DNA from: Auanema rhodensis
Lineage: Eukaryota > Animalia > Nematoda
Direction: 5' to 3'
Length of the DNA: 64,000 nt
Assembly (NCBI GenBank): GCA_964057225.1
Contig: OZ059895.1
Coordinates: 9,176,001-9,240,000, forward strand
Shown piece after piece: positions 14,301-17,300 of this stretch. The notes under the pieces were generated by a model. That model was not told the DNA's origin. It did not search any database and was given only the letters and a program-made list of their open reading frames with translations. Every line of letters starts with the position of its first letter. Within the stretch, counting starts at the first letter, position 1. A program made the position numbers and the translations under genes.

Positions 14301-17300
14301 TCTTACATGAAACAAACCTTTGCGGTTTGAGCCAAAGCCTTCGCCAGATCCGAAACCAGAATCTAGTGAATACGGTTAAATAGACCTATTAAAAACAAAG
14401 AAACCTTTTTTCTCAGATTCAAACCCAGAGCTTCCAAAACCATCTGAAAAATACAATGCCATAACTCGAACTTCAAATATAAATCAAATTTGCTATATCA
14501 AAAACATATGATAAATTATAACATTAATTATTTTAGCAGCTTAAAAAAAATTAAAAAACGAAATCAAACCAGATTTATTAAACCCTCCACCACTCTTATT
14601 CCATCCTCCCCCTGAAATATGGAAAAATAATGTTTAAAGACAATAAGAGATTAGAATACTAACCTGGACGACTTCCTCCAAAACCATCATTTCTATCTCT
14701 ATCTTAAAAACAATTAATGATAAACATCATGTAAACAAACTCTTGGTAACCTCTTCTATCATTGAATCCACGATTGTTTCTTGAGTTATCTTCTATATTA
14801 TATTAACTTTTTATGAGAATAAACGTATCCTAACCTCTTCTACTATCTGAACCAAACTCAGAAGATGTTTTGAATCCATTATCTTTAATTAAAACTGAAA
14901 ATTCATATGACTCAACAAAAGCCAACCTTTTCTGGCTCCGAAGGATGAGTCATTTTTGAATCTGTCTTCTAAAATTTGATAAACAGATGGTATCATATCT
15001 CAATATCTTAATGAAACCTCTCTTGCTGCCAAAACTATCCCCACCAAACTCTCCAGCTTTCTTGAAACCGTCTTCTAAAGTAAAAAAAGTTGAATATCCC
15101 AACAGCCAGATCCCTACCTCTCTTGTTGCCAAAACCATCCCCACCAAACTCTCCAGCTTTCTTGAAACCGTCTTCTAAAGAAAAAAAAGTTGAATATCCC
15201 AACAGCCAGATCCCTACCTCTCTTGTTGCCAAAACCATCCCCACCAAACTCTCCAGCTTTCTTGAAACCGTCTTCTAAAGTAAAAAAAGTTGAATATCCC
15301 AACAGCCAGATCCCTACCTCTATTGCTGCCAAAACCACCCCCACCAAACTCTCCAGCTTTCTTGAAACCGTCTTCTAAAGTAAAAAAAGTTGAATATACC
15401 AACAGCCAGATCACTACCTCTCTTGCTGCCAAAACCACCCCCACCAAACTCTCCAGCTTTCTTGAAACCGTCTTCTGAAGTAAAAAAAGTTGAATATCCC
15501 AACAGTCAGATCCCTACCTCTATTGCTGCCAAAACCATTCCCACCAAACTCTCCAGCTTTCTTGAAACCGTCTTCTAAAGTAAAAAAAGTTTAATATCTC
15601 AACAGCCAGATCCCTACCTCTATTGCTGCCAAAACCATTCCCACCAAACTCTCCAGCTTTCTTGAAACCGTCTTCTAAAGTAAAAAAAGTTTAATATCTC
15701 AACAGCCAGATCCCTACCTCTATTGCTGCCAAAACCATCCCCACCAGTTTTCTTGAAACCGTCTTCTAAAGTAAAAAAAGTTGAATATCCCAACAACCAG
15801 ATCCCTACCTCTCTTGTTGCCAAAACCATCCCCACCAAACTCTCCAGCTTTCTTGAAACCGTCTTCTGAAGTAAAAAAAGTTTAATATCTCAACAGCCAG
15901 ATCCCTACCTCTCTTGTTGCCAAAACCACCCCCACCAAACTCTCCAGCTTTCTTGAAACCGTCTTCTAAAGTAAAAAAAGTTGAATATACCAACAGCCAG
16001 ATCACAACCTCTCTTGCTGCCAAAACCACCCCCACCAAACTCTCCAGCTTTCTTGAAACCGTCTTCTAAAGTAAAAAAAGTTGAATATCCCAACAGCCAG
16101 ATTCCTACCTCTATTGCTGCCAAAACCATTCCCACCAAACTCTCCAGCTTTCTTGAAACCGTCTTCTAAAGTAAAAAAAGTTTAATATCTCAACAGCCAG
16201 ATCCCTACCTCTATTGCTGCCAAAACCATCCCCACCAGCTTTCTTGAAACAGTCTTCTAAAGTAAAAAAAGTTTAATATCCCAACAGCCAGATCCCTACC
16301 TCTCTTGTTGCCAAAACCATCCCCACCAAACTCTCCAGCTTTCTTGAAACCGTCTTCTAAAGTAAAAAAAGTTGAATATCCCAACAGCCAGATCCCTACC
16401 TCTATTGCTGCCAAAACCATTCCCACCAAACTCTCCAGCTTTCTTGAAACAGTCTTCTAAAGTAAAAAAAGTTGAATATCCCAACAGCCAGATCCCTACC
16501 TCTCTTGTTGCCAAAACCATCCCCACCAAACTCTCCAGCTTTCTTGAAACCGTCTTCTGAAGTAAAAAAAAGTTGAATATCCCAACAGCCAGATCCCTAC
16601 CTCTCTTGTTGCCAAAACCATCCCCACCAAACTCTCCAGCTTTCTTGAAACCGTCTTCTGAAGTAAAAAAAGCTGAATATCAAAACAGCCAGATCCCTAC
16701 CTCTCTTGCTGCCAAAACCATCCCCACCAAAGTCATCAGCTTTCTTGAAACCTTCTTCTAAAGTATATGACGCTAAACATCCCAACAGCTAGAGTCCTAC
16801 CTTTCTTGCTGCCAAAACCATCCCCACCAGCTTTCTTGAAACCGTCTTCTAAAGTAAAAAAAGTTGAATATCCCAACAGCCAGAACCCTACCTTTCTTGC
16901 TGCCAAAACCATCCCCACCAAAGTCATCAGCTTTCTTGAAACCGTCTTCTGAAGTAAAAAAATTTGAATATCCCAACAACCAGATACCAACCTTTCTTGC
17001 TGCCAATACTATCTCCACCAAAACCTCCAGATTTCTTGAAACCTTCTTCTAAAGTGGAAAACGTTAAACACCCCAACGGCCATTAACCTACCTTTCTTGC
17101 TGACGATACTGTTCCCACCATATCCTCCATTCAGATTGGCGAAGTTATCTTCTTCAAATCTTCTGTCGATCTTTAAGCTATCCTCTGAATTTTGGTACCT
17201 TGAGACCTATACATATACCAAAATCTAACTTGTATCATCGCCGCTGCTACTACTCTTACTAACATCTTCTAGAATTAAATAAATAGAGTTCAAAAGCATC

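What the first reader, a model, noticed from the sequence alone, without database searches (positions are those of the whole stretch)
15018..17091. GLH FG-repeat domain built from a tandem array of exon+intron cassettes
Seen: 21 near-identical units, each a 57-nt exon ([19 protein letters not shown]) plus a 43-nt intron, with GT and AG intact in every unit. Exonic indels are all 9 nt and frame-preserving (units at 15718, 16209, 16801 drop EFG); the only 1-nt indel (A7 to A8 near 16570) falls in an intron. This is the pattern expected if the spliced frame is under selection. Established: GLH FGG repeats behave like FG-nucleoporin repeats and promote perinuclear P-granule association. Inference: condensate valency here is being expanded by duplicating whole exon-intron units, which also creates about 20 new introns at once.
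Basis: partly seen in the sequence, partly recalled or inferred. Interest (0 to 1): 0.85.

Follow-up and report, generated by a model that had tools for sequence, protein, structure and literature searches.

The report
Exon-intron repeat array in worm Vasa
A roundworm's germ-granule helicase gene (GLH/Vasa) grew its floppy phenylalanine-glycine tail by repeatedly copying one 100-base intron-plus-exon unit, 21 copies so far; the layout is unusual for this gene, but the process is ordinary and also shapes unrelated genes in this genome.

Summary
The array is real: 21 units (43-nt intron + 57-nt phase-1 exon, minus strand, 17091-15018), all GT-AG. It lies in the only glh/vasa gene I found in this clade V nematode (model: 61 exons, 1311 aa). 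It is the youngest part of a larger feature: the first 49 introns are all phase 1, so the whole disordered N-terminus sits on 48 symmetric small exons. Six related nematode genes have 3-11 N-terminal introns and, where repeats are found, carry them inside large exons. The units differ by 0-20 of 100 bases and are recombined, so the 20 extra introns accumulated stepwise, not at once. Older flanking exons give better evidence of splicing. The scan had already noted exon+intron arrays in other genes of this genome; I confirmed two unrelated ones on the same chromosome. That points to a genome-wide mutational tendency rather than selection on valency. New variant of a known kind.

The parts
11401..18223 (-). 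glh/vasa DEAD-box helicase gene, model of 61 exons, 1311 aa, open frame, acidic C-terminus ending in Trp
   Evidence: model; Pfam DEAD, Helicase_C exon by exon; core exon lengths match Ancylostoma; tree
15018..17091 (-). young array: 21 x (43-nt intron + 57-nt phase-1 exon), exons 13-33, aa 173-562, 38 FG / 18 FGG
17092..18102 (-). exons 2-12: symmetric phase-1 small exons (21-93 nt); exons 9, 10 and 12 are older relatives of the array exon (z 3.7-5.2) with unrelated upstream introns
13739..14968 (-). exons 34-46: symmetric phase-1 small exons with FG/GF motifs; 34-35 resemble the array exon, 39-46 form an older duplicated family (z 4.4-6.6)
13647..13697 (-). exon 47: first CCHC zinc knuckle on its own 51-nt symmetric exon
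   Evidence: zf-CCHC E 5e-7
13399..13572 (-). exon 48: Gly-rich stretch and second CCHC knuckle
   Evidence: zf-CCHC E 2.5e-8
11401..13294 (-). exons 50-61: flanking domain, DEAD and Helicase_C domains, acidic Trp terminus
15718..16848 (-). three 48-nt exons (16848-16801, 16256-16209, 15765-15718) carrying the same 9-nt in-frame deletion at a TGG microhomology

Best explanation
This is the functional, probably single-copy GLH/Vasa gene of a clade V nematode. GLH N-terminal regions are ancestrally interrupted by phase-1 introns, and this genome has very short introns (38-46 nt in the helicase core), so a ~100-bp stretch can hold a whole intron plus a 3n exon. Unequal crossing-over and gene conversion between such units add or remove whole in-frame FG modules, each with its own intron (sequence pattern shown; mechanism inferred). 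Repeated rounds left 48 symmetric exons; the 21-unit array is the latest round and raises the N-terminal FG count to 61, against 10-30 in homologs. All units are most likely spliced in constitutively (inferred), giving a roughly charge-neutral, Lys-rich, disordered FG tract. By analogy with C. elegans GLH-1, it helps tether P granules to FG-nucleoporins at nuclear pores (inferred). Selection keeps frame and splice sites; copy number and spacer sequence look free to drift.
For: Open 1311-aa frame with 49 consecutive phase-1 introns. A frame-blind segmentation trained only on core introns gives 3n lengths for 20 of 28 flanking exons, p 4e-5. Exons vary less than introns: 17 variants/57 nt vs 24/43, p 0.03; in the oldest units 21/276 vs 31/215, p 0.018, counts not fully independent. 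Older flanking exons keep similarity to the unit exon while their introns do not. Each of four intron retentions tested gives a stop (aa 213-865) upstream of the helicase motifs. 20 of 55 site pairs fail the four-gamete test, which indicates in-register recombination. No amino-acid constraint: 2 synonymous vs 15 non-synonymous variants. Homolog N-terminal introns are mostly phase 1 (28 of 34). Unrelated exon+intron arrays exist on the same chromosome. GLH-1 FG-repeat function: bioRxiv 10.1101/663641, 10.1101/760256, PMC12050070.
Against: Tests inside the array have low power. The N-terminal exon model outside the array is hand-built, and the frame-blind run reproduced only 18 of its 28 flanking exons exactly. 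No close relative was available to date the expansion. Weak selection on total FG number cannot be excluded.
Confidence: 0.7

Rival explanations
1. Adaptive valency expansion: selection favoured more FG stickers in this GLH, for example because it is the only GLH, whereas C. elegans spreads FG repeats over GLH-1, -2 and -4.
For: FG count 61 vs 10-30 in homologs. No second GLH found; the two next-best loci are LAF-1/VBH-1-like without knuckles. FG deletion in C. elegans has dose-like effects on perinuclear wetting (10.1101/663641). No Phe codon is substituted in core units 5-20, though power is low.
Against: Three units lost one FG by deletion and were kept or copied. No amino-acid constraint. 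glh-1 FGG-deletion worms are nearly fully fertile at 20 C (PMC12050070). The same kind of array occurs in unrelated genes. Lys-rich charged spacers need not strengthen condensation (own knowledge).
Confidence: 0.13
2. Splicing-tuned valency: the symmetric exons are skipped in variable or regulated numbers, giving GLH isoforms with different FG counts.
For: All 48 exons are 3n and phase 1-1, so any subset can be skipped in frame. Acceptors in the array and flanks score lower than core acceptors (core scores are inflated because they trained the matrix).
Against: Symmetry is required for exon duplication to survive, so it is expected without any skipping. Short 43-nt introns favour pairing of the nearest sites (own knowledge). 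Unchecked earlier notes on similar arrays in this genome report all exons spliced in (s1-409949, s1-391240).
Confidence: 0.1
3. The array is not spliced exon by exon: it is an intronic minisatellite skipped as a block (exon 12 to exon 34 is in frame), or a dead relic.
For: Block skipping keeps the frame. No synonymous-site signal.
Against: The unit grades into flanking FG exons, every GT and YAG is kept, the -3 base only toggles T/C, there are no stops or frameshifts in 21 exons, and exons are less variable than introns.
Confidence: 0.05
4. Assembly artefact (wrong copy number).
Against: 19 of 20 units are distinct, with structured shared variants. The array is only 2.1 kb in a 112-contig, 181-Mb assembly.
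Confidence: 0.02

Closest known systems
C. elegans GLH-1/GLH-2 and other clade V nematode GLH (Vasa/DDX4) helicases
   Same: Gly-rich FG/FGG N-terminus, CCHC knuckles, flanking domain, DEAD and Helicase_C, acidic Trp terminus; 52-57% identity over the core with most clade V GLHs; core exon lengths shared with Ancylostoma.
   Different: 49 N-terminal introns vs 3-11; 843-aa N-terminus with 61 FG vs 250-490 aa with 10-30 FG; 12% Lys vs 2-4%; the repeat unit includes an intron.
Intra-exonic tandem expansions of the Vasa/GLH disordered region (P. pacificus 33 nt x17, C. auriculariae 27 nt x19, H. polygyrus 117 nt x3, N. lugens 87 nt x3)
   Same: Recent lineage-specific tandem amplification of Gly-rich repeats in the same region.
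   Different: Those lie inside one 675-833-nt exon; here every repeat is a separate exon.
Intron multiplication by internal (tandem) gene duplication; repeat-per-exon genes such as collagens, elastin, titin PEVK, flagelliform silk
   Same: Symmetric exon plus intron copied in tandem and homogenised. Tandem duplication is listed as a prevalent route of intron gain, including in Caenorhabditis (PMC3443670). The named repeat-per-exon genes are from my own knowledge, not checked here.
   Different: PMC3443670 mainly describes new introns made from duplicated exonic AGGT; here an existing intron is copied. The unit is very small (100 bp) and sits in an RNA helicase, not a structural protein.
Schistosoma micro-exon genes (MEG)
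   Same: Long run of short symmetric exons that could be skipped in frame (own knowledge).
   Different: MEGs are secreted, have much shorter exons and long introns, and variable splicing is shown; none of this is shown here.

Membership tests
GLH/Vasa (DDX4) helicases | Glycine-rich FG/FGG repeat N-terminus | tested here: met
   61 FG, 23 FGG before the core; feature list from 10.1101/663641
GLH/Vasa (DDX4) helicases | CCHC zinc knuckles | tested here: met
   two, Pfam zf-CCHC E 2.5e-8 and 5e-7
GLH/Vasa (DDX4) helicases | Flanking domain plus DEAD and Helicase_C with intact motifs | tested here: met
   Pfam exon by exon; continuous local alignment with GLHs over 450-480 aa; motifs I, Ia, II intact and motif III reads SAT across an exon junction
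GLH/Vasa (DDX4) helicases | Acidic residues before a terminal tryptophan | tested here: met
   model ends D-E-G-W-stop
clade V nematode GLH clade | Groups with GLHs, apart from other animal Vasa proteins | tested here: met
   IQ-TREE 100/100 for the 22-row nematode GLH clade; sister position to Caenorhabditis only 91/65; midpoint root; no LAF-1/VBH-1 rows in the tree
GLH/Vasa (DDX4) helicases | Germline expression and P-granule localisation | not testable with these tools
tandem exon+intron duplication array | Unit holds one intron and one symmetric 3n exon with intact splice sites, both homologous across copies | tested here: met
tandem exon+intron duplication array | Units are spliced into mRNA | not testable with these tools
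   no RNA runs obtained; indirect support only
micro-exon genes (MEG-like combinatorial splicing) | Variable exon skipping in transcripts | not testable with these tools
   no RNA data

The most novel reading that the evidence does not exclude
The 48 symmetric exons let this single GLH change its FG valency in steps, by regulated exon skipping or by heritable unit-number change, and this tunes how tightly germ granules attach to nuclear pores: a natural valency series for a condensate protein.
Probability: 0.12. Interest if true: 0.7.

Novelty: new variant of a known kind. Interest (0 to 1): 0.36.

Why it matters
It is a clear record of how a condensate-protein disordered region and its intron count grow together. 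Young, middle-aged and old rounds of intron+exon duplication lie side by side in one conserved germline gene, giving 49 N-terminal introns against 3-11 in relatives. If splicing is confirmed and unit number varies among isolates, it offers a natural FG-dose series for P-granule tethering. Without that, it is an extreme but ordinary repeat expansion, and one of several in this genome.

Tried and rejected
The joined spliced model was used only inside local scripts; database searches were exon by exon by reference, and the joined-protein search and fold were left out. Closest database fragments (P0001, P0002) lay on 0.9-1.9 kb contigs, too short for the N-terminus. Necator, Nippostrongylus and Lytechinus loci were not on record. 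My guess of Dictyocaulus is not favoured: the gene falls outside the strongylid clade (no lungworm row in the tree) and two paper searches did not identify the assembly. A second glh was not found (search counts are lower bounds). A regular 5-unit higher-order repeat (TRF period 491) is not clearly supported: mean distance by lag is nearly flat, lowest at lags 6-7. Paper searches found no description of exon-per-repeat GLH/Vasa genes, which is limited evidence. Gao and Lynch 2009 was not held.

Full report
Observation. Tandem Repeats Finder gives one array at 15016-17102, period 100, 21.1 copies. On the minus strand it resolves into 21 exons: 18 of 57 nt and three of 48 nt. The introns are 43 nt, one is 44 nt, and all begin GT and end YAG. 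Units 5-20 differ by 0-9 bases per 100 and units 1-4 by 6-20; 19 of 20 units are distinct. The unit matches nowhere else in the 181-Mb, 112-contig genome.

The gene. A coordinate-built model runs from ATG 18223 to the stop at 11401: 61 exons, 1311 aa, no internal stop. Exon-by-exon Pfam scans give DEAD, Helicase_C and two zf-CCHC. The core exon lengths (110, 127, 142, 75, 109, 91, 173, 113, 106) equal those of Ancylostoma glh, which validates the core. The core is 52-57% identical to most clade V GLHs and groups with them at 100/100, outside strongylids and Pristionchus, weakly beside Caenorhabditis. All four Vasa-defining domains listed in 10.1101/663641 are present. The two next-best DEAD-box loci in the genome look like LAF-1/VBH-1 and lack knuckles, so this is probably the only GLH. 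The species was not identified; earlier unchecked notes call it Auanema-like. The joined protein was not sent to any database search or fold.

The larger feature. The first 49 introns are all phase 1, so exons 2-49 (12-174 nt, median 51) are all symmetric. Because I built the flanks by hand, I ran a frame-blind segmentation trained only on the 11 core introns. It gave 3n lengths for 20 of 28 flanking exons (p 4e-5) and reproduced 18 exactly. Exons 9, 10, 12, 34 and 35 still resemble the array exon (z 3.7-5.6) while their introns do not, and exons 39-46 form an older family. The region therefore records several rounds of intron+exon duplication, in which exons were kept and introns drifted.

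Comparison with relatives. I mapped six nematode GLH proteins and one insect Vasa onto their loci. The nematode genes have 3-11 introns before the core, 28 of 34 in phase 1, so phase 1 is ancestral. Their tandem repeats lie inside single exons of 675-833 nt: 33 nt x17 in P. pacificus, 27 nt x19 in C. auriculariae, 117 nt x3 in H. polygyrus, 87 nt x3 in N. lugens. Repeat expansion of this region is thus common; the intron-containing unit is what differs here. The window protein has 61 FG in 843 residues against 10-30 in homologs, and 12% Lys against 2-4%. The array gives 38 FG in 390 aa with net charge +3.

Selection. The three deletions remove the same 9 nt at a TGG microhomology, and units 9 and 14 share linked intron and exon variants, so there are one or two events. 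With 21 variable intron positions of 43, sparing GT and AG has p 0.06. The 1-nt indel is in a T-run. Distinct exon variants are 2 synonymous and 15 non-synonymous, matching neutrality (p 0.30). Better support: exons carry fewer variants than introns (p 0.03; oldest units p 0.018), the -3 base only toggles T/C, and each of four intron retentions tested truncates the protein upstream of the helicase motifs. Frame and splice sites look protected; peptide detail does not.

Mechanism. Twenty of 55 informative site pairs show all four combinations, so units recombine in register. Together with the divergence gradient, this means stepwise unequal crossing-over and conversion, not one event. With core introns of 38-46 nt, an intron plus a small symmetric exon fits in 100 bp, so an ordinary short tandem duplication adds an in-frame module and an intron. 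Tandem duplication is an accepted route of intron gain (PMC3443670), though that review stresses introns made from exonic AGGT. Earlier scan notes pointed to similar arrays in unrelated genes. I fetched two on the same chromosome: a 91-bp x33 array parsing as 40-nt intron + 51-nt exon, and a 139-bp x26 array parsing as 67-nt intron + 72-nt exon, neither similar in sequence to this unit. I checked their parse only, not their splicing or host genes. A genome-wide tendency therefore accounts for the array without special selection on GLH.

Function. In C. elegans, GLH-1 FGG repeats promote perinuclear P granules and pore clustering, with stronger loss when GLH-2 repeats are also removed, yet FGG-deleted worms are nearly fully fertile at 20 C (10.1101/663641, 10.1101/760256, PMC12050070). 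The array most likely lengthens that tether. Whether more Lys-spaced FG motifs raise affinity is untested. Rivals are adaptive expansion in a single-copy GLH (0.13), isoform-level tuning by skipping (0.10), block skipping (0.05) and assembly error (0.02).

Limits. No close relative was available.

Verdict. A real, extreme instance of tandem intron+exon duplication in a GLH/Vasa gene. I found no paper describing this layout for GLH, but the process is known and recurs in this genome. New variant of a known kind; interest 0.36.

Noticed in passing
window 50042-50539 (+): ORF whose C-terminal part is a MoaE (molybdopterin synthase large subunit) domain, E 7e-13, preceded in the same frame by a stretch that from memory resembles the end of a nicotinamide riboside kinase; possible fusion or two close genes.
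   Followed up: partly
window 13573-13646 (-), intron 47: The 74-nt intron between the two knuckle exons holds a G-rich, exon-like stretch that reads in frame with FG/GF motifs before a stop; possibly a decayed exon.
   Followed up: no
window 13342-13353 (-): A 12-nt symmetric micro-exon (exon 49) between 45- and 47-nt introns, just before the flanking domain.
   Followed up: partly
window 18260 (-): T-rich AG acceptor 37 nt upstream of the ATG; candidate trans-splice site.
   Followed up: no
window 12146 (-): The acceptor of exon 57 is GAG rather than YAG; the resulting exon length (91 nt) matches Ancylostoma.
   Followed up: partly
L008 4050-4882; L012 3502-4250: Public H. polygyrus and P. 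pacificus GLH models appear to read the Gly-rich repeat exon in the wrong frame (Glu/Ala/Val-rich product with few or no FG), so FG counts from databases can be too low.
   Followed up: no
L012 4519-4815: An 81-bp repeat (about 4 copies) in an annotated intron of P. pacificus glh, at the position where zinc knuckles are expected; may be missed knuckle exons.
   Followed up: no
L010 10221-12195: An 85-bp tandem array (23+ copies) about 1 kb downstream of A. duodenale glh.
   Followed up: no
window about 5000-9700 (-) and 26011-26698 (-): Neighbours: an LDL-receptor-class-A transmembrane protein gene downstream of glh, and a second DEAD-box helicase (DDX41/abstrakt-like by eye; Helicase_C E 1.7e-14) about 8 kb upstream.
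   Followed up: partly
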